DNA of 64,000 nucleotides from Zootoca vivipara (taxonomy: Eukaryota). The translations under genes were made by a program, and so were the position numbers. The stretch spans positions 44,888,001 to 44,952,000 of the forward strand of contig NC_083289.1 in the NCBI RefSeq assembly GCF_963506605.1. The letters are read 5' to 3'. The notes beneath the pieces are model-generated. The model worked only from the letters and a program-made list of their open reading frames with translations, was not told the DNA's origin and ran no database searches. Positions 3,826 to 57,404 of this stretch are shown here, one piece after another; position 1 is the stretch's first letter; each line of letters opens with the position of its first letter.

Positions 3826-3961
3826 CAGGCATCCCCAAACTGCGGCCCTCCAGATGTTTTGGCCTACAACTCCCATGATCCCTAGCTAGCAGGACCAGTG
3901 GTTGGGGAAGATGGGAATTGTAGTCCAAAACATCTGGAGGGCCGCATGCTTGACATGCCTG
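3826..3961. mobile_element. hAT MITE (CAGGCATCCCCAAAC family)
   Basis: Imperfect palindrome CAGGCAT...ATGCCTG; 8-bp TSD GTGTACCC at 3818-3825 and 3962-3969. Confidence 0.85.
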
Positions 3962-6525: not shown

Positions 6526-9500
6526 GAAATAAAAGGTTGGGTAAAGAATTTATAAATTCGGCGGAAAACAAGAAGAGAGGAGTGGTCTTGTATATAAAGG
6601 ATAAATTAGATCCGAAATTGATTTTGAAAGATGAGGAAGGAAGAGTGATTGCGGTCCAAATATCGATCCAAGGAGAAAAAATGCTGATGGTGGGAATATA
6701 TGCACCGAATGAGAACAAAGCAGAATTTTACAAGAATTTGGAGGAAAGATTGACAGAGTTTATGGATCAAAAGATAGTACTCATGGGGGATTTTAATGGA
6801 GTGACAGTGCCAGAACTGGATAGGACGAAGAAAAGGAAGAATGAAGGTAAGCTACCAAAATCCTTTTTTGAATTGGTAGAAAACCTGGGCCTAGTGGACA
6901 TCTGGAGGTTGAAGCACCCCACGATTAAACAGTTTACGTTCTTCTCAGAACCAAACCAAAGTTCTGGAAGGATAGACCATATATGGATCTCCAAAGAACT
7001 AGTGCCCAGGGTAAATAAAGCAGAGATAATACCAAGAACACTGTCAGACCACAATTCAATATTCATGGAACTGAAAGGCAAAGACCAAAATTCTTTTAGG
7101 TGGAGAATGAATGAAGATCTTTTTGAAGATAATGAGGTGGTGATGAAAGCCAAGAATGTCTTGAAAGATTATTTTTATTGGAATTTACATAAAGACACTG
7201 GACTTGATATGGTATGGGATGCAAGTAAAGCTGTGATGACAGGCTTTCCAATACAGCAAAACAGTTTCCTGAAACGAAAGAAAGAAAAGAAGAGGGAAGA
7301 AATTTTGAAATGTCTCATGGAAAATGAGAAAAATCTGATTGACAAACCAGAGAATCAACAAATTAAAAATAATATAAAGATGTTACAGACACAATTCTCT
7401 ATGTTGATCAACCAGGAGATTGAGTGGAAAATAAAACAAATGAGACAAAAAAATTTCGAATCGGCCAATAAAACAGGAAAACTGTTGGCCTGGCAATTAA
7501 GGAAACGCCAAAATCAAAGTGTAATAACTAAGATAAAAATGGAAGGAGGAGTGACAGAAGAATCAAAGGAAATTAAGAAAGCCTTTCAAAAATTCTATAA
7601 AGACTTGTATTGCAAAAAGAAAGAAGAGGAGAAGAAGATCAGTGACTATTTAGGAAAATATGGTCTGAAACCAATTCCTGAAGAGGAAAGTAAGAAACGT
7701 AATAACAGGATAACGACACAAGAAGTACAACAAGCAATAAAGAGAATGAAACAAGGAAAAGCCCCAGGACCAGATGGACTTTCAGCGAAATATTATAAAG
7801 TTCTAAATGGACAGTTGGTACCAATTTTAGAAGAAGTGATGAATGACATTCTTGCAGGAGGAAAGATCCCAAATACATGGAAGGAGGCGTATATAACATT
7901 GATTCCAAAGCCTGGCACAGATGGCTTAGAAGTAAGAAATTATAGACCAATATCACTATTGAACAATGATTATAAATTATTTGCGGATATAATGTCTAAG
8001 AGGCTGAAAGAAGTCTTGAATGAAATGATACATAGAGACCAAGCTGTTTTTCTTCCTGGTAGACAGTTAAAGGACAATGTTAGACATATAATAGATGTAA
8101 TAGAATATCTGGAAACCAAGATAGATAAACCAGCAGTTTTAATGTTTGTGGATGCAGAGAAAGCCTTTGATAATATATCTTGGCAGTTTATGAAAAGAAA
8201 TTTGGAATCGATGATTGGAAAAGACTTCTTTTTGAATGGGATCGAGGCAATATATTCAGAACAAAAAGCAAGATTGATAATCAATAATACTTTAACAGAA
8301 TATTTTGATATCACAAAGGGAACCAGACAGGGATGTCCTTTATCTCCTTTATTATTTATTATGGTTCTGGAAGTACTATTGAATAGACTAAGAGATCTTT
8401 CCTCAATTAGAGGAATTAAAGTCGGTGCAAAACAATTCAAAGTGAAAGCCTTTGCAGATGATCTAGTTTTAACATTGGAAAACCCTAAGGAAAGTGTTGC
8501 AGAAGCTATAGAAGAAATTGAGAAATTTGGCCAACTTGCAGGATTTAAATTAAATAGACAGAAAACAAAGGTCATGGCAATGAATATGACGAAAGAGGAA
8601 AAGCAGGAGCTACAGCTAAAATATGGTCTCGACGTGGCAAAAAAAGTACAGTATTTGGGAATATGGATGACAGCAAAGAATATTAATCTATATAGCGACA
8701 ATTATGAACCAGTATGGAGAGAAATAAAGAAAGATTTGGAAAGATGGACTAACATGAAAATGTCATTCCTGGGAAGAATAGCAGCAATAAAGATGAATGT
8801 ATTACCTAAGATGTTATCCCTATTTCAAACTATACCTGTTGTGAAGGGTACAAGACAATTTCAAGAATGGCAGAAGATTTTGTCAAGATTTGTCTGGCAA
8901 GGGAAAAAGCCCAGAATAAAGCATAAAATTTTGGTAGATAGAAAAGCAAGAGGCGGATTCTCTCTACCAGACCTCAGACCTTATTATGAAGCGTCTTGTA
9001 TATGTTGGATAAAAGAGTGGATAACTCTAAAAAATATGGACCTGCTAGATTTGGAAGGTTTCAATAATAGATTTGGATGGCATGCATATTTATGGTACGA
9101 TAAAAAAAAGTCTCATACAGGGTTCACAAACCATGTGATAAGGAGATCTCTGTACGAGGTGTGGGAAAGAAATAAAATGCTGTTGGAGTCTAAAACACCA
9201 TGGTGGGTATCACCAGCAGAGGTATTAACAGTTAAGAAAGTAAATATGGAGGGGAGGCGGGCCACGTACAAGGAAATTTTGACAAAAACTGAAAAAGGCT
9301 GGAGACTGAAACCTTATGAAGAAATTAAAGGGATACTAACAGGATGGATACAATACCATCAAATAAATGATGTTCTTAGAGAAGATAGGAAAATAGGATT
9401 TGAGGATAAAAGGTCCAAATTTCAAACAGAAGTGCTAGAAGGCAAAACAAAGCTTCTGTCAAAAATGTATGACCTGTTGTTAGAGTGGTATACAAAAGAT

Positions 9501-10327
9501 GAGCTGACAAAAGAGGTGATGATTAAATGGGCAAATGACTTTGGGCATAATATTGAATATGACGCGTGGTTGAAATTATGGAATCAAACTTTAAGATTTA
9601 CAGCATGTACTGCCTTGAAAGAAAATATATATAAGATGATTTATAGATGGTATTTAACGCCAGTTAAACTAGCTAAAATGTATAGAATGAGTGATAAAGC
9701 ATGCTGGAAATGTAAAGAGAGAGACGGTGAATTTTATCATATGTGGTGGACATGCGATAAGGTAAAAAGATTTTGGGAGATGTTATATAATGAACTGAAA
9801 AAGATGTTTAAATATACTTTTCCAAAAAAACCGGAAGCATTTTTGTTAGGAATAATAGGAGGAGAGATTAGAAAAGAGGATCAAGTACTGTTTATGTATG
9901 CGACAACCGCGGCTAGGACATTGTTAGCCCAAAAATGGAAATTACAGGAATTACCAACAATTGATGAGTGGCAGACGAAAATGATGGACTATGCTGAACT
10001 TGCTAGATTGACTTGTAAGATCCGTGACCAAGGTGAGACGAAGTTTCAAAAGGACTGGAGTAAATATGTGGACTATATGGAGAAAAACTGTAGATCTTTA
10101 AAAACACTTGCAGGACTGAAATAAATCCTACGAATTGACTAAAAGGGTAAAAAGGAACTGCAAAAAATGGAGTTAACAAGAAACCCGCATGAAGGGGAGG
10201 GGGGGAAGTCCTAGCTCGGCAGAGCAAGATGTAAGAGGGAAATATAAGATGTTTTGTATAAAAGATTGTTCTTTTTTTATTTTAATTTGATAAATTGGAA
10301 AATTGAATAAATTTATTTGAAAACAAA
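6526..10327 (+). mobile_element. L1-clade LINE, 5'-truncated, young insertion
   Basis: Contains the open ORF2 below, a short 3' UTR and AATAAA near 10306; 11-bp TSD CAAACGCAACC at 6515-6525 and 10328-10338. Confidence 0.92.
6537..10124 (+). CDS. L1 ORF2 (AP endonuclease + reverse transcriptase + C-terminal CCHC), N-terminally truncated
   Basis: 1195 uninterrupted codons with IYAPN, GDFN, RIDHIW and SDHN (endonuclease); KAPGPDG, YRPISLLN, DAEKAFD, GTRQGCPLSP, FADD and YLGI (RT); CWKC..HMWWTC. The called start is a TTG next to the truncation point, not a native ATG. Confidence 0.9.
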   Translation: MGKEFINSAENKKRGVVLYIKDKLDPKLILKDEEGRVIAVQISIQGEKMLMVGIYAPNENKAEFYKNLEERLTEFMDQKIVLMGDFNGVTVPELDRTKKRKNEGKLPKSFFELVENLGLVDIWRLKHPTIKQFTFFSEPNQSSGRIDHIWISKELVPRVNKAEIIPRTLSDHNSIFMELKGKDQNSFRWRMNEDLFEDNEVVMKAKNVLKDYFYWNLHKDTGLDMVWDASKAVMTGFPIQQNSFLKRKKEKKREEILKCLMENEKNLIDKPENQQIKNNIKMLQTQFSMLINQEIEWKIKQMRQKNFESANKTGKLLAWQLRKRQNQSVITKIKMEGGVTEESKEIKKAFQKFYKDLYCKKKEEEKKISDYLGKYGLKPIPEEESKKRNNRITTQEVQQAIKRMKQGKAPGPDGLSAKYYKVLNGQLVPILEEVMNDILAGGKIPNTWKEAYITLIPKPGTDGLEVRNYRPISLLNNDYKLFADIMSKRLKEVLNEMIHRDQAVFLPGRQLKDNVRHIIDVIEYLETKIDKPAVLMFVDAEKAFDNISWQFMKRNLESMIGKDFFLNGIEAIYSEQKARLIINNTLTEYFDITKGTRQGCPLSPLLFIMVLEVLLNRLRDLSSIRGIKVGAKQFKVKAFADDLVLTLENPKESVAEAIEEIEKFGQLAGFKLNRQKTKVMAMNMTKEEKQELQLKYGLDVAKKVQYLGIWMTAKNINLYSDNYEPVWREIKKDLERWTNMKMSFLGRIAAIKMNVLPKMLSLFQTIPVVKGTRQFQEWQKILSRFVWQGKKPRIKHKILVDRKARGGFSLPDLRPYYEASCICWIKEWITLKNMDLLDLEGFNNRFGWHAYLWYDKKKSHTGFTNHVIRRSLYEVWERNKMLLESKTPWWVSPAEVLTVKKVNMEGRRATYKEILTKTEKGWRLKPYEEIKGILTGWIQYHQINDVLREDRKIGFEDKRSKFQTEVLEGKTKLLSKMYDLLLEWYTKDELTKEVMIKWANDFGHNIEYDAWLKLWNQTLRFTACTALKENIYKMIYRWYLTPVKLAKMYRMSDKACWKCKERDGEFYHMWWTCDKVKRFWEMLYNELKKMFKYTFPKKPEAFLLGIIGGEIRKEDQVLFMYATTAARTLLAQKWKLQELPTIDEWQTKMMDYAELARLTCKIRDQGETKFQKDWSKYVDYMEKNCRSLKTLAGLK

Positions 10328-10647: not shown

Positions 10648-10783
10648 CAGGCATCCCCAAACTGTGGCCCTCCAGATGTTGTGGCCTACAACTCTCATGA
10701 TCCCTAGCTAACAGGACCAGTGGTCAAGGAAGATGGGAATTGTAGTCCAAAACATCTGGAGGGGCGAAGTTTGGGGGTGCCTG
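10648..10783. mobile_element. hAT MITE nested at the 5' edge of the Penelope fragment
   Basis: Same family as 3826-3961; 8-bp TSD CTGTAGGA at 10640-10647 and 10784-10791. Confidence 0.85.
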
Positions 10784-11166
10784 CTGTAGGAGAACAGGAC
10801 ATTCTCCCAGGACATTCTTTACAGGATCTCAAAGTAGCTGTTTTATTACAAAAAAAATTCAGAAACAGACTGGAAAGAGAAGTTGCTGAATTGCAACTCA
10901 TTACCAAGCTTAAAACCATGGAGAGACCTGGTCTGAATAAGGACACTGGATTCTTATCTCATTATACATGATAAAGCTTTCTTTAGCACCTCACCCATTG
11001 CTTTTTCCTGCAAGACCAATTGCAGTCGTTAACAGTCGTCAACAGGATCACCACTCCTATCAGCCAATCACCCATTCCCACCACCCTTCTGATTAATACC
11101 CCTCCCACCCCACCCTCTGACTATACATAAAGGTCTGGTGCCTTCCGTTTCAGTGTATCCGTTTCA

Positions 11167-11206
11167 GTATATCTGAAGAAGTGTGCATGCACACGAAAGC
11201 TCATAC
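11167..11206 (+). ncRNA. Minimal type I hammerhead ribozyme motif in the Penelope pseudo-LTR
   Basis: CTGAAGA core 11173-11179; palindromic stem II GTGTGCATGCACAC 11181-11194; GAAA 11195-11198; GC-TC; stem I TAT/ATA. Predicted cleavage after C11202. Confidence 0.75.
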
Positions 11207-11869
11207 CTATGACAAACTTAGTTGGTCTCTAAGGTGCTACTGGAAGGATTTTTTTATTTTATTTTGAGTGCGTCAGACCAACACGGCTACCTACCTACGA
11301 GCTTTGTCCCTAAAAAGCAACTGTGAATTGAACGATCCAGTGGTTGCTGCTACTGGTGCAAAGGAAGAGAAGAGCCAGAGGCTGCGGGGGTGTTTTGATG
11401 TGCCACTGCTCATGGGAGCCCAATGGGCTGCAGTACAGGCTTCATGGCACATGCCTCCAACATAATACCTCTGCTCCTTACCCCTCAAGCATCTTCCTCC
11501 CAAGGCATCTGGCTGCCTCATTCCGCCTAAGGGTTCTGCCCAGCTGTAGCTTGGAGCGCTTCTTCAGAGCAATCTTATTTTTTTTCTTTCAGAGCTCCTG
11601 AGCAACGGAAGGCAAACTGTTCTGCCTAATGCCTTTCTCCAGAGGAGTCGAGTCAGGATGAGTCACTCAGAACCCACCGCCCTTTACCCAGAGGTGCACA
11701 CATGCAGATGAGGCCCTGACAGGCTCAGCTGGCGTTTTTATTGACACTCCAAGACAAAAGCATCAATCATGAAGCTGGCAGAAAGTGGGTTCCAAAGAAC
11801 CGAGGCACCTCAGTGCTCCACAGCCACTCCAGAAGAGCATGGAAATCTCGCAGAAACAATGAGCGCTGA

Positions 11870-16085: not shown

Positions 16086-16652
16086 CTTGGTTTCTGTGTA
16101 GCTGGAATGTGCCCTATTGTACAAATCACACCAATTGCCCCCCACCCACTTTTGCATTTGCCCCCTTCCGCCTCCACTGGCCTGCGGCCCCTGGAAGTTT
16201 GCCCACAGGAGAATGTGGCCCCTTGGCTGAAAATGCTCTCTCACCCCTGCCAGAGGTTGTGTCTATCATTCAAAGAGCAAAGAAGCCAACAGGGTCTTTC
16301 CTTGAAAGGGTGTCATTAATGTTGTGCCGCTTACTCTACTGTACAGGGTGCAATTGAACTCTTGGGGTGGGTAATTATGTGTCATGGCTTTGCCTTCAGA
16401 GCGGTTGCTCCTCTGCCCTGGGGTGTGTGAGACTGTAGCCAAGAATTATAGGGAAATGATGGGCTGCAGTCTGTTGTTAAACTCCCACTCTCAATCTTAT
16501 ACAGTACAAAGCATTCTCCATGCGCTGTTACTGCTTCAGCGTGTTCAGAGAGAAAGATGTATTTCTGCTGTGTTGTTGTTGTTGTTGTTGTTGATTTCAT
16601 TTCTTTATATTTTTATATTGCTTTATATTTTTAAAGAAAAAACGCCTTAAAA

Positions 16653-16788
16653 CAGGCATCCCCAACCAGCGGCCCTCCAGATGTTTTGGCCTACAACTCC
16701 CATGATCCCTAGCTAACAGGACCAGTGGTCGGGGATGATGGGAATTGTAGTCCAAAATATCTGGAGGGCCGAAGGTTGGGGGTGCCTG
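16653..16788. mobile_element. hAT MITE (CAGGCATCCCCAA family)
   Basis: 8-bp TSD CCTTAAAA at 16645-16652 and 16789-16796. Confidence 0.85.
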
Positions 16789-17132
16789 CCTTAAAACACC
16801 CAAAGATAAATAAATAAATTCCAGAATAAAACATTACTGAAGAAAGTATAAAGTATACATCCAAAGCAACATAATTAACAGGAAGCTGAAATATTACTGT
16901 ATTTTTTTGGTCCATAAGACGCACCTATTTCTTAAAGGAGGAAAACAAGGGAGGAAAACAAGCCTGGCAGTGGAGGCTGCAGAGGAGGAGAAAGCAGATT
17001 TTGGGTTGCACGTTCCCCTCCGCAGCCACAGCTGCCAGTGGCAAAGGGACCGGGGGGGGGGGACGTTCCTCCTTCCTCCCCCGCCCCTTTGCCGCTGGCT
17101 TTAAAGCCAGCTGGGGAGAAGGGGAGGACGCT

Positions 17133-18707: not shown

Positions 18708-18949
18708 ACCGTGCCCATCCAGCTTGGTTGCCCCAGTCACTATGGGTGGTTTCCAACAGAATGTAAAAAAAAAAAAAACCCATAATAAAACATCGAACAT
18801 TAATAATAACAGTCTGAACCAATGCAAGGAAAAGTCACAATAAATTTAAAATAAACAACTTACATCAAATAAAGCAATATTCAATCATGCATTAGAATCT
18901 AATAGTAAACAGTAAAATTATACAGTATCAAGAAATAGTAATTAAACAG

Positions 18950-19061
18950 TTACAGGTAGGTAGCCATGTTGGTCTGACGTAGCTGAAACAAAAAATAAAT
19001 TAAAAAATTTATACCTATGACAAACTTAGTTGGTCTCTAAGGTGCTACTGGAAGGAATTTT
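18950..19061. mobile_element. Short inverted Penelope pseudo-LTR insertion
   Basis: 18950-19010 is the reverse complement of the tail at ~11248-11296; 19011-19061 matches 11203-11252 forward; 14-bp TSD TAGTAATTAAACAG at 18936-18949 and 19062-19075. Confidence 0.85.
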
Positions 19062-20509
19062 TAGTAATTAAACAGGTTACACTTATAAAGAATTACTAAA
19101 CTACAATAGAAAGTAACGTCAAGTCACAATGCGTAAAATACCGCAAAACATACGGAAAACATGTATAAGGATCAAAATGAGAAACAAGGACACACAACAT
19201 TATATATATGAGAAATCCTCACAGAAAGTGGGCTCATAGCACTCACCGAAAGAAGTTAGAATGCATATTTACATTCCATGACTTGGATGAATTGTGCCCA
19301 AGGCTGTCACATAACAGCAGTAGTGTTGACTTAGGATCTAGTGATTCCAGGGCCAGCCCAGCCCCTCCTTTCCCCAGGAATGTCCCATTTTGGAATACCT
19401 CTGTCCACTTGTTAGGTGGGCAGAAAGGAGAGTGCACAAGGGGAGGATCGCTCTATTACAATACTAGACACACTTTACCTGTAGTCTGTATTATGTTGGT
19501 TCTGGTCCAGTGGTCCTCAAACTTCTTTCTCTGGACCACACTCAGAATGAAAATTTGCTCACGCCAATTTTAAAATAAATACATTAGAAAACAAAAAGGA
19601 ACAACTCCTAGCAGTGCTCGATTTATAACATAGAACACAATTACTTTATAATATGATTGTGGGGCAGCCAGAAAGTCTAAAACAATGCAGCTACATAAGA
19701 ACGTGAATCATCCCCGAAAAATAATTGCAAACAAGCCTCTGACACCTGTACCTCAAATGGCTATACAAACTCAATGAGAGGTGTGAGCTTGCTTTTGCCA
19801 GGTAATCTCATTTATATTAGACCTATTTTGAGACAAACAAGCTCCCAACTCCTCATCAAAACAAAGAAACCTGCTACTGGTGTTGACTCAAACAAATTCT
19901 GCCCTGCACTCTGTTCGAACCGGATTGTCCTCAGTATCACTTGATGTTCTTGCTAGCATTTTGAAAATATATCTATCCATATCCTTCCAATAAAATAATA
20001 TATTCTGATACTGTACTATACTACACTGAAATGTTTAAATGTTTCTTTGATTGTCCTTGAACCTTCCTGCCACGCTTGCCATCCTCACCTACCAGCGTAC
20101 TTACCTTCCAACTTTTTCCAATGCAAAATAAAATTGAAATGCACATCTTCCCAAGACACACTCCTTGGTTAGTCACGTAACCCATGCCTCGCTCTCATCC
20201 CGAAAAAAAGCACTTGGGCGCAGGGAGATCTCATGCGGCCCTGAGAAAAGCACTTTTTCGGGGCTAGAGCACAGCCCAAGAGCACGTAAGATCGCAGCAC
20301 CCAAAATGGCCACCAAGTTCTCTTGAGGAAAAACAGGATGTCCCTTTTTTTCTGGGACTCTTGGAAGGTATGCACTACTGTGGCATGCCACACCCTTTGA
20401 GAACCAGCGCTCTCATCCTTTGTTTATGAAGGCCATTGTCAGTCAGTCAGATGGATTTGCTAAAAGATGTTGGTCATCACAAAGCCATCAAGTTTAGAGA
20501 TACATTGCT

Positions 20510-27552: not shown

Positions 27553-28190
27553 TATTTGGATAGGCTTCTCTAAACAAAAATGTTTTTAGCAGGCACTGAA
27601 AACAGTGTAGTAAAGCTAACCTGCCTGATGTCAATAGGCAGGGAGTTCCAAAGTGCAACCACACTAAATGATCGATTTCTTACAAACGTGGAACAAGTAT
27701 TATGTGGCACCTGTAACAATGCTAGTTCTTATTGTTTATGTTCTTGTTCCTACTACTCCTATTATTGTCTTATTAACACACCACCCTTTCTTACACAGAT
27801 TACAGGGTAGTACACAACATGAAAACTGTGATACAGCCATTATAATTAAAGAAACCAGTTAGTTATAACACATATCCTATCATCAAGACTCAGAGTCTTT
27901 AACTGATTGGTTTTTTGTTTCTAATTGCAGGAAATATCGCAATACTTGCCTTCCTCCACCATTTAGCACGGCCTCCTTCGGATATAAACTTATTTTGTGG
28001 CCTATCCCTTTGCAACAACCTCTAGCTCAATTTTAAGAAATAAGTAAATAGTAAAAAGATCCATATTTCGCAAGCCTTCCCAAAGCCTCTTAGCAGCCAG
28101 AGAAATTGAACAGCTTTTTCTGTAGGCTGTTTTTTTCTAAGCAAGGCTGACACCTGCTGGGAAGCTCTGAAATGGCTATTTGTTAAATAG

Positions 28191-28280
28191 GTATCTGAAG
28201 AAGTGTGCATGCACACGAAAGCTCATTCCAAAATATAAACTTAGTTGGTCTTTAAGGTGCTACTGAAGGAATTTTTTTAT
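28191..28280 (+). mobile_element. 90-bp Penelope pseudo-LTR insertion carrying a hammerhead motif
   Basis: GTAT-CTGAAGA-A-GTGTGCATGCACAC-GAAA-GCTC-ATTC; 12-bp TSD TTTGTTAAATAG at 28179-28190 and 28281-28292. Confidence 0.82.
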
Positions 28281-28759
28281 TTTGTTAAATAGTGGATTCT
28301 TTCACTATTAGGTCCGTATGACCCTTAATTTTGCTACATGTGTATGATCAAGCATGGATTCTGTGCTCAGAATGGCCAGATCTAGGCCCTGAGGAAGGAG
28401 GCATGTGTGTGCCACGAGAACAAGCTCATGCATTCAGGCCGGTTACATAAGAACATAAGAACATAAGGGGTTCTTCTGGATTGAGCCAATGGTCCATTTA
28501 GTCTAGCAACCTTTTCTCACAAGGGCCAACTAAATGCCTCAAGGAGGAGCCACAATGGGATCTGAGCATATGAGCGCTTTCCTCATCTGTGGTTTCTAGT
28601 AACTGGTATTCAGGAGCATTACTACCGCCAACTGTGGAGGCAGACCATAATCACCATGGCTAGTAGTCATCAATAGCCCTGGAGGAAAAGAAACTCAGGA
28701 AAGGTTCGGACAATAGAACCCTCCCCACGATGCCGCGTAGACCTCCACCGAGGCCAAGG

Positions 28760-51800: not shown

Positions 51801-54800
51801 AATCCCTGGCAGGTGACCATCTAACCTCTGCTTTAAAACCTCCAATGAAAGGAGTGCAGTCCATTCTACCATCAAACAGCCGAAATATGCTGAGTCAGAA
51901 TCTCTTTTTTTGGTGATTTGAATCCATTAGTTCGGGTCTTACTCTCTGGAGCAGCGGAAGAAGCTCCACCATCCATGCGACAGCCCTTGAGATATTTGAA
52001 CATAGCTATTATATTTCCTCTGTCTCCTCATTACCAGACTAAACATACCCAAGTCCCTCAACCGTTCATCATGGGGCTTGCTTTCCAGGTTCTTGACAAT
52101 ATTGGTTACCCTCCTCTGCACATGTCAATATTCTTCTTAAACTGTGGTGCCCAGAACTTGACACAGAACCTGCGGCCTATGGGGGTCGTTTAACTAGCCT
52201 ATGGACCCTCGCCGCCTGCTCGGTCGGCTCCCGTGTGCCGCACTAAACCCGCACAGAGCAGAGCAGGGACTGCATTCCACAATGCTGGCCGGCTTCCCAT
52301 TGGCTGCAGGAAGCTCCTGCAGCCAATGGGAAGCTGCGCACGCCTCCTCTGCGCTGGAAGGAGCGCCAGAAATAGTGTTTGCGCATGCATGCACGTGCAC
52401 ACTCTGGCCCACCGTGGCATCTGCGGGACTGTGAACCTGACCAAGGCACAAAAACTTTGCCAGCCCCTGTCCTAGATCCTTTTCACATGTAGTACTGGCA
52501 AGCCAGGTATCTCCCGTCTTATATATGGTTATTTGTGTCTAAGTGCAGAACCTTACATGTAATCCATTTTGTTTTCTCCAATCTATTACAATCAGGATTC
52601 AATGTGACTTTATCGTCTGAGGTATTAGCTACCTCTCCCGGTTTGGTGTCCTCTGCAAACCTTCATTTTAACCAGGATACACTATCTGAACATTAGTTAT
52701 TGTAGAGAAATTTCTGATTTCTCATAGAATTACACCCCCACTCCTCACAAATTGGTAAACCTGCAGAGATTCTGTTGCTTTTAGTGGGTTCCTTTTTTGT
52801 AAACGGGTCCATCTCCTCCTGCTGATTTTTGGTGTGGTTTGGAACAGAGAGGCATGTAAATCCAACTAAAGACTCCTGTTTGCCAACAAGTTACGTAGTT
52901 AGAATGTGGAATAATGAAAGTATTTTTTCTAATCTTACAGAGAATTAGACAGTGCGTGACATTTAGTTTCTTACAGTACAAGGTTGAAATTAGCTGTCCC
53001 AGCTGACCTCAGCAATAGTATTTGTGAACACAGTATTGATGGACATTTGTACCTTGGTTAATTTAATTTGAAAGTGTCACTTTTGGCCTTCTTAGTCTTT
53101 CCTGGATCTTTTTATTATTATTATCTAAGAGAGAGAGAGAGAAGTTTTCCATTTGAGCTACAAAAGAGCAAATGTTTCATTAAAGATTTCCATTGTGGAA
53201 TAAGTGTGAAATTACTGTATTCATCCCTTTTTTCCAATTAAGGAAATCGTCCACAAAGGCCATACGGTCACCACAGAGACTTTCAACTTTCTGCTTATGG
53301 GGTGCATAAAAGACAAAGAGAATGGGTTTCGCTATGCCTTGCAGGTCTGTATTTTCCTTTCCTCTTTACAACAGAGCAAACCAACAAAGAGCTTCAAGCT
53401 TGCATTCACTCTGGCTGGTTTTCTTAAGCGATTGCTTCCTCTGGTTGTGATCCTTAAATTTCCATGTATCTTATAGAACTAGGGAGCTATATACATCTTA
53501 GATTAATTTTATTGCTAAATTTTATCCCACCCTTCTTCCCAAAGGAACCCACGGCAAAATGTTAAAACCATACAATTTAAAACCAAATAAAAACCATATT
53601 TAAAACAATTAAACACCATCTCAATTTTTTAAAAAAGCATCATGCTAATGATTGTGAGGTTGTGCTGTCAGTTCTGAGTTGCTTTTTAAAAAGACGAGAG
53701 GGTGCGTTACCCTTTAGTTAATCACCATTATGCCATTTGCAGTTACTTAACATGCTTATGTTGAAACATTTGCCTTCAGAACACAAGATGTATCGTGGAG
53801 GAGGTGGGCAGGACAAAGGATCCAGCCAGCAGACCTGATTCTGAGCTACCCTCCCCCCCCCCCGCAGGCTACTTTGTTTATTGCTCATAGTTTGTTTGGA
53901 GCTAAACAAACCACAGGCCCCATTTCAGACATAACCCAATGCCAGGAATCACGGTCCATCTCTCCTGCATGCTGTGAGGGAGGAGCAACATAGATGAGTT
54001 TGGTGCTTTTACAGTATACACTGTTTTACTGTGATGTGCAAACTGAGCTACTACCCCGTTTCTCCGAAAATAAGACGTAGCCATAAAATAAGCCAGAGCA
54101 GGATTTTTAAGCATTCAAGGAATATAAGCCATACCCCCAAAATAAGCCATAGTGATAGGCAGTTTAACCTTGTAGGTTAAACTGTGCCATACTTAATTAA
54201 AAAAATAAGACATCCCCTGAAAATAAGTCATAGTGGGGGTTTTTGAGGAAAAATAAATATAAGACGGTGTCTTATTTTTGGAGAAACACGATAAGTGGCT
54301 TTGGGGACAACTGCTGTCTTCCAGGCTCCAATCCCAAGAAGCAAATTCCTCTGAATACTGAGACTTACTGCTGAGTGAGCACATTTAGGATCAACCTGTC
54401 TGTTTCCCATTAGTGTTAAAACTGTAATTATATAGATTGGGGTACAGTTCTCTTTTCTCTGCCCTGACCTTTCTTTCCAACAGGTTTGGCAGCAGATGCT
54501 TAAGCTGAACTTAAAACCCGACAGTTACAGCTACAACCTGATGCTCGGTGCTGCCAGAGACTGCGGCCTTGGTGACCCCCTTGTAGCTTCCAATTTGTTG
54601 CTAAGAACTTCCAAGGAAAGCCCAGCTATCCTGAGGCTGGAGGCTGGTAAGCAACACCGGAAGGCGAAGGGTCGGCGAGGAAAGGAAGTAGATGCTGGAG
54701 CTGCAATGCAGTTGGATGTGGAGATGTTGGAAAAATGGGTGTTCCCAGAGGAGGACAGAAAACCTGAGCAGCAAGTCTATAGCCAAAAAAGCAAACTCAA

Positions 54801-57404
54801 AAATGACCATTGTGCAAAGGCAGAGACTGGCGATATCTCCACTTTGCCAGATTCTGTTACACGCAGGAATCTGGGGATCTCTGATAAAAAACAGATGGCT
54901 CCAGATGTTACAGAAGCAAACACTATGTGTTTTTCCAAAGCCTCCTTCAACTTCCCCAACTTGTTGGACTCGCAGCCGCCCAGCGAAAATGTGATCTCCT
55001 TAGGGACGGTGGCAACCGCCTCCGATAGACTGGCACTCATTGGGGACATGGAGGGTTTCTTAAAGAGAATGAAGGATGACGATGCAGCATCCAGTATCAA
55101 AACTTTCACACTGCTAGCTGAGCTGGTGCAGCCCAACAGCCAGTCAGAGTCTTCCTTGTTGACTGTGATGGAGGAGCACAACGTGAAACCAGATATAACT
55201 TTTTTTAATACCTTGGTGAGGAAGAAGAGCAAAGGAGGAGATCTGGAAGGAGCAAAGGTAAGATCGCGGGCATATGTGTGGGTCAAGGGTGGGCGGCTTT
55301 CAGGCTTGCAGGAACTACTGTGGTTTCTTTTTTTTACCAGAACCTGATACATTTCCTGCCCACCCACTAGTGTAGGCCATAACCTTTTGGAGAACAGCAT
55401 TGACTAAGAAGTACAGCTACATTGCATGCAAAAAGTCCCAGGATCAAAAGTCCCTAGCATTTCCAGGTAGGACTGGGACAGAACCTTGTCTGAAATCCGG
55501 TCAGTGTAGTAGCCAGTATTGAGCTTAATTGGCCAATGGTCTGACTGAATGTAAGGCAGCTTCCAATGTTCAATTAGCTTCATTCGTACACATTGCACCT
55601 CCTCTCAGCATGAACTTGAACAGGTAATCTGGACAGCTGTAGTCACATGCCTTTGTATATTACAGAGCCTGCTGCCCCTAGTGCTGAAGGAGGGACTTTC
55701 TCCCAATCTACAGACGTTTTGCAACTTGGCAATAGCCTGCCGCAAAAAAGAGGATGGACTGCAGTTACTCTCAGACATGAAGGTACAGAAAACTCAAGCT
55801 TTTGGAGCTGTTCTGCATGCGGCAGACCTGGTGGTTTTGATGGCTACATGTTAATGAGGAGTTCTGTTAACATAAAGGGGATCTTGTCTTTCAGCCTTCC
55901 CACTAGCTCTTGTAGGTGGCCATTGCAATCAGTTGTGCAGTGTGCAAATCCCCGTCTCCCCAGCTTTGGGGGCAGTAATCTTGGTATACTGTGCGACTCC
56001 TAAATGTGTGTGTAAGGACTTCAGAATTACCTTTGTCTGACAGTTTGGTGCTGTTTTTCAGCGTTCTGGAATAAATCCCAATGTACAGATCTATGGTGCA
56101 CTTGTAACTGCAGCTGTGAAGAGACTGGACTATGCCTACCTCACAGAGATCCTCGCAGATATGAGTAGAAACCGTGTTCCTCCAAATGAAGTTGTCCTAC
56201 GCCAGCTGGAGTTTGCAGCCCAGTATCCTCCTAACTTTGATAGGGTGAGGTAAACCTTTGTTTTCTGCTGAAGCTGATTTATACTCAAAAGAGAATATTA
56301 AGACCAGATATTATATGCACTGTCCTTTGAACACCCTTGCAATTCTGTACATTCTTGCACATTTACCCAGATTGTACCCAGTTAAGTGTGCATCAGCCTT
56401 CCCCCAACATATTCCTTTCCATATATTTGCATTCAAACTCTCAGCCCCAGCCAGCATAATTTAGTAGTCTGGGATAATGGTTGGGCACCAGGTTGAGGAA
56501 GAAAAATGTATAGGATGCAAAGTGAGTGCAAGTATACAGTATCTAAAGAAAGGCCATTATACCAGCATCTACTTAATTGGATAAAGGTCTTCTCCACACC
56601 AATGGTATTAATTTCAGTTGACAGCTGAAAATGTACTGTTTAACCAGACCGTGGGACAAGGTGAGAGGTTGGATGAGCTTATTTATTGCATGTTTTAATT
56701 CATCACCGATACTGTGTGTTTTCTGCAGAAATGTTTATACACCATTGGGTTGTATTCAGTGATATTCCTATACAGGGTGGGCCCATTGAAGTCTATGGAC
56801 ATGACTTGTTCACTAATTTTAATGGGTATGGGCAACATTAGCTACAGCCCTCTAATTTGTTTAATGTTATGGATTTCTGCCCTAGGGCTATTTGATAAAA
56901 TGTGAGAAATCCAAGAGTTTCCCGTTTATCTTACCTGTGCTCTCTGAGAGACCACCAAACGCAACTGGTAGCAGCCAGACCTGGTAACACTTCTAGATCC
57001 CATTGATTCCAGCAGAAGAGAGTTTAAGCACTTGCTTGTGGTCTTCCCTCTACAGAAACATTTTAATACCAGCATTCCTCCACCCCTTCCAAATAGAAGC
57101 AGCAAAAGTTTATGTAAGCTCCTGACAAATCTAAGAAGCAGTTTCTCACTTCTTAAGAGTAGAACTAATCTTCTCTTGCTGTTACAGTGTGTTAATTCTC
57201 CTCCTTTTCCTCTTGCAGTACAAAACAAAGGACTATTACCTGGAGAGAATTAATGGCTTTCGATCCTACTACTTCCGCTGGCTGAAGTGGATGGAGGCAG
57301 AAGAAACACCACACCCTTGGGCAAAATACAGAACTCCTAAGCAGCCAGAAAACAAACATAATCCAGAAGATGCACAAAACTACAGCAGCCAGAGGAGGAG
57401 GTAG
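48863..57404 (+). CDS. PTCD1: Pentatricopeptide repeat domain 1, mitochondrial, 732 aa
   Basis: Coding exons 48863-49339, 49941-50081, 51179-51397, 53243-53344, 54484-55257, 55666-55782, 56062-56244 and 57219-57404 (2199 nt), all phase 0. [15 protein letters not shown] motifs ([31 protein letters not shown]), C-terminal [10 protein letters not shown]; Arg-rich N-terminal presequence. Confidence 0.95.
51723..52660 (-). mobile_element. CR1 LINE 3' fragment interrupted by a hAT-like MITE (~52165-52469)
   Basis: ATCATAGAATTGTAGAGCTGGAAGGGACC CR1 tail; minus-strand peptide [28 protein letters not shown]. Confidence 0.75.
54054..54291. mobile_element. pogo/Tigger-like MITE in a PTCD1 intron
   Basis: TIR CCCCGTTTCTCCGAAAATAAGAC / GTCTTATTTTTGGAGAAACACG, TA-flanked. 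Confidence 0.78.

What the first reader, a model, noticed from the sequence alone, without database searches (positions are those of the whole stretch)
18950..19061. Retrotransposed copy that begins exactly at the predicted hammerhead cleavage site
Seen: between 14-bp TSDs lie the reverse-complemented Penelope tail (18950-19010) and a forward segment starting ATACCTATGACAAACTTAG at 19011. In the intact copy this sequence starts at 11203, the first base after the predicted cleavage site (GAAAGCUC^AUACC). Both segments end at about the same T-run, as twin priming would give. Inference: the second cDNA ran off the 5' end of its template, so that end was made by ribozyme cleavage and the ~100-nt 3' product was mobilised. 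This would be a genomic record of in vivo self-cleavage and suggests a tiny ribozyme-processed, non-autonomous retroelement. One copy cannot exclude chance.
Basis: partly seen in the sequence, partly recalled or inferred. Interest (0 to 1): 0.8.

Follow-up and report, generated by a model that had tools for sequence, protein, structure and literature searches.

The report
Two-armed Penelope micro-insertion at hammerhead site
A 112-bp dead-end insertion of a very common lizard Penelope-like retrotransposon has one arm that starts exactly at the predicted ribozyme cut site, but genome-wide read pile-ups show this is an exception, so one locus cannot prove ribozyme cleavage in vivo.

Summary
Between exact 14-bp target-site duplications (18936-18949, 19062-19075) lie an inverted Penelope "tail" arm (18950-19010) and a forward arm (19011-19061). 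The forward arm's first base matches 11203, the base after the predicted hammerhead scissile bond. The arms overlap by 6-7 nt in the T-run.

This is the known two-armed Penelope insertion. Both DNA strands prime reverse transcription, one at each of the two internal start sites (T-run and tail end) described for the Anolis element PAc.

The cleavage inference remains unproven. About 48,000 DNA contigs and 7,800 RNA reads of the same species were laid on the reference copy. The dominant 5' end lies at 11169/70, 33 nt upstream, so most copies carry an uncut hammerhead. That position is 31 nt downstream of a TATA box, so it is probably the transcription start. Depth does not rise at 11203; I estimate copies starting there at no more than about 2%. 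No pile of RNA ends was listed.

I put about 0.4 on a ribozyme-cut template. The "tiny non-autonomous retroelement" reading is not supported, because the copy has no ribozyme core and no promoter.

Two unchecked notes from other windows of this genome report the same coincidence.

The parts
18936..18949 (.). Left target-site duplication, TAGTAATTAAACAG
   Evidence: Exact 14-nt direct repeat with 19062-19075; sequence read.
18950..19009 (-). Inverted arm: T-run plus complete Penelope tail (element +46..+98), with its 3' end ..CCTGTAA next to the left duplication. cDNA primed on the top strand at reverse-transcription start site 2.
   Evidence: Alignment A1. BLAST 18954-18999 against 11253-11296, 87%. 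Pattern match 18956-18978 on the minus strand with 1 mismatch. The family 3' end 11296+GTAA is seen as loose ends.
19010..19010 (.). One base (t) at the inversion joint that matches neither arm's source, if both arms came from one RNA. It may be an untemplated filler.
   Evidence: The forward arm carries G at the 11247 equivalent, so this T is not templated by the same source. The variant 11247 G>A exists in the family, so this is not certain.
19011..19061 (+). Forward arm: element +1..+51, from the first base after the predicted hammerhead cut to the T-run. It has no tail. cDNA primed on the bottom strand at start site 1.
   Evidence: BLAST 19011-19062 against 11203-11254, 98%; alignment A1.
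19062..19075 (.). Right target-site duplication
11169..11300 (+). Reference copy A: predicted RNA start (11169/70), minimal hammerhead (core 11173-11179, helix II 11181-11194, GAAAGCTC 11195-11202, cut between 11202 and 11203), T-run 11249-11265 (start site 1), tail 11266-11296 (start site 2). Pseudo-LTR remains with a TATA-like box lie upstream (about 11122-11134).
   Evidence: motif scan; depth profile and loose ends; fold.
28191..28280 (+). Copy C: a typical 90-bp mini-copy, from the start of hammerhead helix I to the T-run, with an intact hammerhead, no tail, and a 12-bp target-site duplication (28179-28190, 28281-28292).

Best explanation
The insert is one dead-on-arrival micro-insertion of an abundant lizard Penelope-like element (PLE), made by target-primed reverse transcription on both strands of a staggered (14-bp) break. 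The top-strand 3'-OH (..AAACAG) primed at the outer start site, the tail end ..CCUGUAA. It copied about 60 nt and stopped at the T-run. The bottom-strand 3'-OH (..TTACTA) primed in the U-run, the inner start site, and copied 51 nt toward the RNA 5' end. The simplest reading is one RNA with two primers: the outer cDNA stopped where the inner primer sat, which explains the 6-7-nt overlap. The two cDNA ends were then joined without microhomology. Shown: the anatomy, the target-site duplications, and the two family-wide 3' ends. Inferred: the order of events and the use of a single RNA. Across the family, the norm is run-off to 11169/70 (probably the capped transcription start) with the hammerhead uncut. 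In this copy the inner cDNA ended 33 nt short, exactly at the scissile bond. I rate a ribozyme-cut template at about 0.4 and an unrelated stop (premature termination, a stall at the folded ribozyme, or trimming before joining) at about 0.55. The confidence given below is for the two-armed PLE insertion mechanism, not for cleavage.
For: Exact 14-bp target-site duplication enclosing both arms. Arm identities and register. Two family-wide 3' ends in DNA contigs of two studies: loose ends behind 11255/11265 (222/246 and 123/131 contigs) and behind 11296 followed by GTAA (116/91). Tail depth is 7-10% of core depth. Copy C independently ends at the T-run with its own target-site duplication. Published PAc biochemistry shows both strands nicked and extended, two internal start sites bounding the ~34-nt tail, and AT-rich targets (PMC11167929). 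An inverted 5'-truncated copy with a one-sided tail is the standard PLE layout (PMC8557442). The geometry matches PAc: its tail spans +55..+89 from the cut, against +47/63..+94/98 here.
Against: No step of the mechanism was observed directly. Use of two RNAs by a dimeric protein is not excluded. The primer ends show only weak complementarity to the start sites. The reference used for the pile-up is a single, slightly aberrant copy with a 14-bp duplication and a diverged tail. Logan contigs give k-mer depth, not copy counts.
Confidence: 0.82

Rival explanations
1. One reading: the inner cDNA ran off the 5' end of a template already cut by the hammerhead, leaving a 5'-OH at AUACC. The copy would then be a genomic record of in vivo self-cleavage. 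The template need not be a 100-nt RNA; any cut PLE transcript would do, because initiation is internal.
For: The coincidence is exact to the base. Run-off to the RNA end is the family norm, shown by the sharp 5' boundary at 11169/70 with heterogeneous flanks (134/128 contigs), so internal stops are uncommon. The two arms together hold exactly one non-redundant copy of +1..+98. The joint has no microhomology and one extra base, as expected after run-off. The PAc hammerhead has the same architecture (GAAACGUC^A against GAAAGCUC^A) and cleaves in vitro only when the PLE protein is bound, that is, within the particle that inserts. Two unchecked notes report the same coincidence at other loci of this genome.
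Against: This is one locus in a family of roughly 10^5 copies, so chance alone should put many 5' ends on any given base. Depth does not rise at 11203 (tables 2 and 3), which I take to bound such copies at about 2% or less. No loose-end or joint class at 11203 appears among the listed rows, whereas 11170/11172 recurs. Other breakpoints occur at 11184-11186 and 11218. No RNA-end pile was listed (table 6). In Anolis no gDNA or RNA discontinuity was found at the site, and hammerhead mutants did not change the insertion product. Minimal hammerheads cleave poorly and need dimers. Helix I of the A/B subfamily is only 3-4 bp.
Confidence: 0.4
2. The stop has nothing to do with cleavage. It could be premature termination, a stall of the reverse transcriptase against the folded ribozyme core, or nuclease trimming before end joining, and it fell on this base by chance.
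For: The family is very large (core k-mer depth 4.6 million against 16 for single-copy sequence in X1). Varied breakpoints appear in other copies (11172, 11184, 11186, 11218, 11232, tables 5 and 5c). There is no depth step at 11203. With about 80 possible positions, roughly 1 in 80 truncated copies would fall here. The scan had thousands of copies to look at.
Against: This gives no reason for the exact base. Most cDNAs of this family reach the RNA end. The only strong local structure, the helix II hairpin at 11181-11194, would predict a stall near 11195, not at 11203.
Confidence: 0.55
3. The copy is a member of a tiny, ribozyme-processed, non-autonomous retroelement (retrozyme-like) that propagates as a ~100-nt RNA.
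For: Animal non-LTR retrozymes derive from PLE pseudo-LTRs and depend on PLE enzymes (PMC7229834; bioRxiv 10.64898/2026.07.22.740005). The segment contains both reverse-transcription start sites.
Against: The copy lacks the CUGANGA box, helix II and the GAAA box, so it cannot cleave again. It has no tandem units and no promoter. The abundant short form in this genome is a different unit (11169/70 to the T-run, with an intact hammerhead). No RNA-end pile was listed at its boundaries.
Confidence: 0.03
4. The structure arose by post-insertion rearrangement of an ordinary tail-bearing copy (an inversion plus a deletion), or it is an assembly artefact.
For: PLE inverted structures are known to trouble assemblies.
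Against: A perfect target-site duplication encloses the whole structure. The arms overlap rather than being a simple inversion of one copy. Two independent changes would be needed. The flanks are single-copy, and the architecture is the recurrent one for this family.
Confidence: 0.03

Closest known systems
Two-armed (inverted plus tail) insertions of endonuclease-positive Penelope-like elements, and the in vitro behaviour of Anolis Poseidon PAc (Craig et al. 2021, PMC8557442; Frangieh et al. 2024, PMC11167929)
   Same: One target-site duplication encloses two oppositely oriented 5'-truncated arms. The 30-40-nt tail is present on one side only. The outer ends lie at two internal start sites some 50 and 90 nt downstream of a minimal hammerhead. 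The target is AT-rich.
   Different: This insert is extremely short (112 bp in all). The inner start site is a U-run rather than an AC-rich loop. One arm ends exactly at the predicted scissile bond, which has not been reported for PAc; no discontinuity was seen there.
L1 twin priming (Ostertag and Kazazian 2001, from my own knowledge; the term is used in papers listed)
   Same: Inverted and direct segments lie within one target-site duplication and meet at nearly the same template coordinate with a small overlap.
   Different: There is no poly(A). The enzyme is a GIY-YIG/telomerase-like PLE protein that nicks and extends both strands as its normal behaviour. Both primers use defined start sites rather than one tail and one random internal site.
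[quoted passage not shown]
   Same: The idea that a self-cleaving ribozyme defines the 5' end of the RNA template and hence of the genomic copy.
   Different: In R2 the full-length copies as a class start at the cut. Here the class starts 33 nt upstream with the ribozyme uncut, and only this copy (plus two unchecked ones) starts at the cut.
Animal non-LTR retrozymes (Cervera and de la Pena 2020, PMC7229834; Li et al. 2026 preprint)
   Same: Short, ORF-less, derived from the PLE pseudo-LTR.
   Different: Retrozymes are tandem units that each carry a complete hammerhead and give circular RNAs. This copy has no ribozyme core and is a single unit.

Membership tests
Penelope-like element insertion (endonuclease-positive, Poseidon/Neptune type) | Minimal type-I hammerhead in the pseudo-LTR of the source family | tested here: met
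   The descriptor CUGANGA + helix II + GAAA hits only copies A (11173-11198) and C (28195-28220) in 64 kb on both strands. The features listed by Cervera and de la Pena 2014 are present.
Penelope-like element insertion (endonuclease-positive, Poseidon/Neptune type) | Optional 30-40-nt tail, i.e. two alternative 3' ends | tested here: met
   loose ends behind 11255/11265 and behind 11296(+GTAA). Tail depth is 7-10% of core depth. Copy C ends at the T-run.
Penelope-like element insertion (endonuclease-positive, Poseidon/Neptune type) | Inverted 5'-truncated copy abutting a direct copy inside one target-site duplication | tested here: met
Penelope-like element insertion (endonuclease-positive, Poseidon/Neptune type) | Source element encodes RT plus GIY-YIG endonuclease | not testable with these tools
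   There is no PLE ORF in the window; the only long ORF is an L1 ORF2. An unchecked note reports a Neptune-type ORF elsewhere in this genome.
Minimal (dimer-type) hammerhead ribozyme | Core boxes C3-A9 and G12-A14; G10.1-C11.1; an extra nucleotide after A9; A15.1/U16.1 with palindromic 15.2-16.2; C17 | tested here: met
   CUGAAGA-A-GUGUGC..GCACAC-GAAA-GC-UC^A in copies A and C. The layout is the same as the experimentally cleaving PAc motif CUGAGGA..GAAACGUC^A.
Minimal (dimer-type) hammerhead ribozyme | Helix I of 4-6 bp | tested here: inconclusive
   Copy A has 3 bp, disrupted by a local 14-bp duplication. Copy C has 4 of 5. The family consensus GGUAU/AUACC would give 5.
Minimal (dimer-type) hammerhead ribozyme | Match to a curated covariance model | tested here: not met
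   Rfam 15 gave no match at gathering score or at E<=10. This is expected for motifs without helix III, but it means the assignment rests on motif alone.
Minimal (dimer-type) hammerhead ribozyme | Self-cleavage at the predicted bond | not testable with these tools
   No pile of RNA ends was listed in two RNA runs (table 6). Most of those reads come from copies embedded in host transcripts, so this says little.
Twin priming | Both arms inside one target-site duplication, 3' ends outward, arms meeting at one template coordinate | tested here: met
   Arms cover +1..+51 and +46..+98.
Twin priming | Complementarity of the second primer to the internal priming site | tested here: inconclusive
   The bottom primer ends ..TTACTA before a run of A. 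Only 1-2 nt could pair with the U-run.
Ribozyme-defined 5' end (R2-like) | Genomic copies as a class begin at the cleavage site | tested here: not met
   The dominant 5' boundary is 11169/70 and there is no depth step at 11203.
Non-LTR retrozyme | Each unit carries a complete hammerhead, with two or more tandem units | tested here: not met
   There is no core in 18950-19061 and the insert is a single unit.

The most novel reading that the evidence does not exclude
This copy, and the two similar ones noted elsewhere in the genome, are run-off cDNAs made on PLE RNA that the minimal hammerhead had cut inside the inserting particle. They would be the first in vivo trace of self-cleavage by a vertebrate PLE hammerhead. 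The ratio of copies starting at +1 to copies starting at the transcription start (at most about 2%) would then measure how often cut RNA serves as template.
Probability: 0.38. Interest if true: 0.6.

Novelty: new member of a known kind. Interest (0 to 1): 0.35.

Why it matters
The function of the hammerheads conserved in Penelope-like elements is an open question. Cleavage has been shown only in vitro, weakly or with protein help, and no in vivo ends have been found (PMC4209133, PMC11167929, PMC8557442). A class of genomic copies starting at the scissile bond would be cheap, assembly-only evidence that cleavage happens in the inserting particle. The present data point mostly the other way. In this lizard, as in vitro for PAc, uncut RNA is by far the main template. 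The very abundant dispersed "single hammerheads" look like run-off copies of the 5' leader, from the transcription start to the inner start site, rather than mobile ribozyme elements.

Tried and rejected
(1) Rfam scans of the whole window and of 10900-11400 at E<=10 found no hammerhead, so the ribozyme call rests on motif and on comparison with PAc.

(2) I looked for more copies in order to plot 5' ends. The window holds only three copies and two hammerheads. Exact-pattern scans of metagenome and viral contigs returned 0. Using the window's L1 ORF2 to reach other lizard contigs failed: the relatives are UniRef-only Podarcis entries without contigs, or 4-6-kb Logan contigs. The other window ORFs are not multi-copy. 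So the census could only be approximated by the single read-laying run, whose lists are cut (631 loose-end rows and 60 joints not shown).

(3) Folding gave little. The leader's MFE is not better than shuffles (z = 0.49). Co-folding two copies is dominated by the palindromic helix II and says nothing about the helix III dimer.

(4) I considered that the inverted arm's lower identity (87%) meant a different source. I rejected this because copy A's own tail is diverged, and arm B matches the family consensus better (loose ends behind 11255 and 11296).

(5) I considered a Pol III reading of the 86-nt unit (TATA at -31, T-run end). It is not needed, because tail-bearing copies read through the T-run. 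I left it as a note.

Full report
WHAT IS THERE. Reading 18800-19220 and testing for repeats shows an exact 14-bp direct repeat, TAGTAATTAAACAG, at 18936-18949 and 19062-19075. It encloses 112 bp (18950-19061). BLAST of the reference region against the window and a four-way alignment split the insert into two arms.

- The forward arm is 19011-19061. BLAST gives 51/52 identity for 19011-19062 against 11203-11254.
- The inverted arm is 18950-19009. On the minus strand it reads from an A/T-rich run through ..GTCAGACCAACATGGCTACCTACCTGTAA. It is 40/46 identical to 11253-11296.
- One base (19010) matches neither source, and there is no microhomology at the joint.
- In element coordinates, with +1 = 11203, the arms cover +1..+51 and +46..+98, so they overlap by 6-7 nt inside the T-run.

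THE RIBOZYME AND ITS CUT SITE. Copy A reads CTGAAGA (11173-11179), A, GTGTGCATGCACAC (11181-11194), GAAAGCTC (11195-11202), then ATACC from 11203. These are the features of the minimal dimer-type hammerheads of Penelope-like elements (PLEs): the two core boxes, an extra nucleotide after A9, G10.1-C11.1, A15.1/U16.1 around a palindromic 15.2-16.2, and C17 (PMC4209133). A descriptor scan finds the motif only in copies A and C of the window. The Anolis element PAc has the same layout (CUGAGGA..GAAACGUC^A; consensus read), and its motif was shown to cleave in vitro in a way that depends on C3 and G8. The cut between 11202 and 11203 is therefore well predicted. It is still motif-based only. Rfam gives nothing, helix I is 3-4 bp in the window copies, and folding adds nothing.

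THE FAMILY, FROM READS. One run search found DNA-type contig sets of the same species from several studies, plus 2026 RNA raw reads. I laid X1 and X5 (contigs) and X21 and X22 (RNA reads) on 11053-11352 at 85% likeness.

- Depth. It rises about 40-fold at 11163-11182 and stays flat at about 4.6 million (X1) and 10.8 million (X5) over 11183-11242, apart from a dip across the variable 11203-11212 segment. It falls about 10-fold in the T-run (11243-11262), stays at 7-10% of the core over the tail (11263-11296), and drops to single-copy level (16 and 40) from 11303.
- 5' boundary. Loose ends with unrelated flanks pile up before 11170 (134 and 128 contigs; 673 and 485 RNA reads). Their last two letters are always GG.
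- 3' boundaries. Loose ends pile up behind 11255/11265 (the T-run) and behind 11296, where the next letters are GTAA.

The dominant genomic form is therefore an ~86-bp mini-copy running from the start of hammerhead helix I to the T-run, with the ribozyme intact. Copy C (28191-28280, 12-bp target-site duplication) is a textbook example. About one copy in ten carries the tail. The two 3' ends correspond to the two internal reverse-transcription start sites of PAc, which bound its ~34-nt tail. That tail spans nt 85-119 from the AUG, or +55..+89 from the cut. Here the T-run is at +47..+63 and the tail end at +94/98.

HOW THE INSERT WAS MADE. PAc protein nicks and extends both target strands and uses the same start sites on each. 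Inverted 5'-truncated copies and a one-sided tail are the standard PLE footprint. In this insert the top-strand end ..AAACAG is followed by the complement of ..CCUGUAA, the outer site. The bottom-strand end ..TTACTA is followed by the complement of the U-run, the inner site. The outer cDNA stops where the inner primer sat, which is what one RNA with two primers predicts. The inner cDNA went 51 nt. This is inferred from anatomy, not observed. An unchecked note from another window (s1-853140) says that all four inverted inserts there have one complete and one short tail, which is the same asymmetry.

DOES THE 5' END RECORD CLEAVAGE? Arguments for:

- The coincidence is exact to the base.
- Most cDNAs of this family reach a sharp end, so internal stops are uncommon.
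- The arms together hold exactly +1..+98 once.
- The joint looks like run-off plus joining.
- The PAc ribozyme is switched on by the protein that performs insertion.
- Two unchecked notes (s1-854128, s1-856277) report the same coincidence elsewhere in this genome.

Arguments against:

- The family has roughly 10^5 copies, so any given base will carry many 5' ends by chance.
Base-level depth goes from 2376 to 2403 (X21) and from 1374 to 1398 (X22) between 11195 and 11204, and it falls in the DNA contigs. I take this to mean copies starting at +1 are at most about 2%.
- No loose-end or joint class at 11203 reaches the listed rows, whereas 11170/11172 recurs. Other breakpoints (11184, 11186, 11218, 11232) occur.
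- The two RNA runs showed no pile of RNA ends (table 6).
- In Anolis no gDNA or RNA discontinuity was seen at the site, and ribozyme mutants did not change the insertion product.

The listed rows are truncated, so a minor peak cannot be excluded. Weighing a chance rate of roughly 0.1% per base against an unknown cleaved-template rate bounded at about 2%, I put the cleavage reading at about 0.4.

WHAT THE SHARP 5' END AT 11169/70 PROBABLY IS. Loose ends before 11161 give the pseudo-LTR consensus ..TATATATAAGGGTCTGGTGACTTCT, followed by GTTTCAGTG (the last G at 11169). The first T of TATATAAG lies 31 nt before G11169, the canonical distance from a TATA box to an RNA polymerase II start site. Mini-copies begin GG|TATCTG, whereas long copies have TG at that place. 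The extra G would fit copying of the cap. The abundant mini-copies are therefore best read as run-off cDNAs of the 5' leader of PLE transcripts, started at the leader's own copy of the inner start site. That makes them dead-end by-products rather than mobile elements. This is an inference and it needs CAGE or RACE.

COMPARISON AND VERDICT. The structure is a clean, very small example of the known two-armed PLE insertion. It works like L1 twin priming but without poly(A). The ribozyme-defined 5' end has a real precedent in R2 (PMC3774820). There, however, the whole class starts at the cut, and that membership test fails here. The insert is not a retrozyme, because it has no core, no tandem units and no promoter.

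- Novelty: a new member of a known kind, with an unproven but testable extra.

Noticed in passing
window 11122-11172 (and loose ends before 11161 and 11170): The dominant 5' end of roughly 10^5 genomic mini-copies is 11169/70. That position is 31 nt downstream of a TATATAAG box in the pseudo-LTR consensus. Mini-copies start GG where long copies have TG. This suggests run-off at a capped transcription start, and that the dispersed single hammerheads are leader cDNAs.
   Followed up: partly
window 11144-11171: Copy A carries a 14-bp tandem duplication (TCCGTTTCAGTGTA / TCCGTTTCAGTATA). It pushes the TATA box away from the start and weakens hammerhead helix I. Its tail end reads ACGA instead of the family's GTAA.
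   Followed up: partly
window 11184-11186 (tables 5 and 5c): Several inverted and tandem joints of other genomic copies break at the apex of the perfect palindrome that forms helix II. This may be a hairpin-induced stop or snap-back of the cDNA.
   Followed up: no
window 11053-11102: This pseudo-LTR stretch has 5-15% of the core depth, but in the RNA runs its first-mate strand bias is opposite to that of the core (table 2). I have no explanation.
   Followed up: no
window 6537-10124: An L1-type ORF2 of 1195 aa (endonuclease plus RT) without stops. Its best relatives are Podarcis muralis entries at up to 63% identity. This points to a lacertid-like lizard genome with young L1s.
   Followed up: partly
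window 10648-10783, 16652-16789, 3826-3944: A ~136-bp repeat that also matches itself in reverse (76-79%), present in three copies at 92-93% identity. It looks like a small palindromic MITE-like element.
   Followed up: no
window 54496-55347: A 283-aa ATG ORF with weak sub-threshold PPR-repeat matches. It may be a host exon.
   Followed up: no
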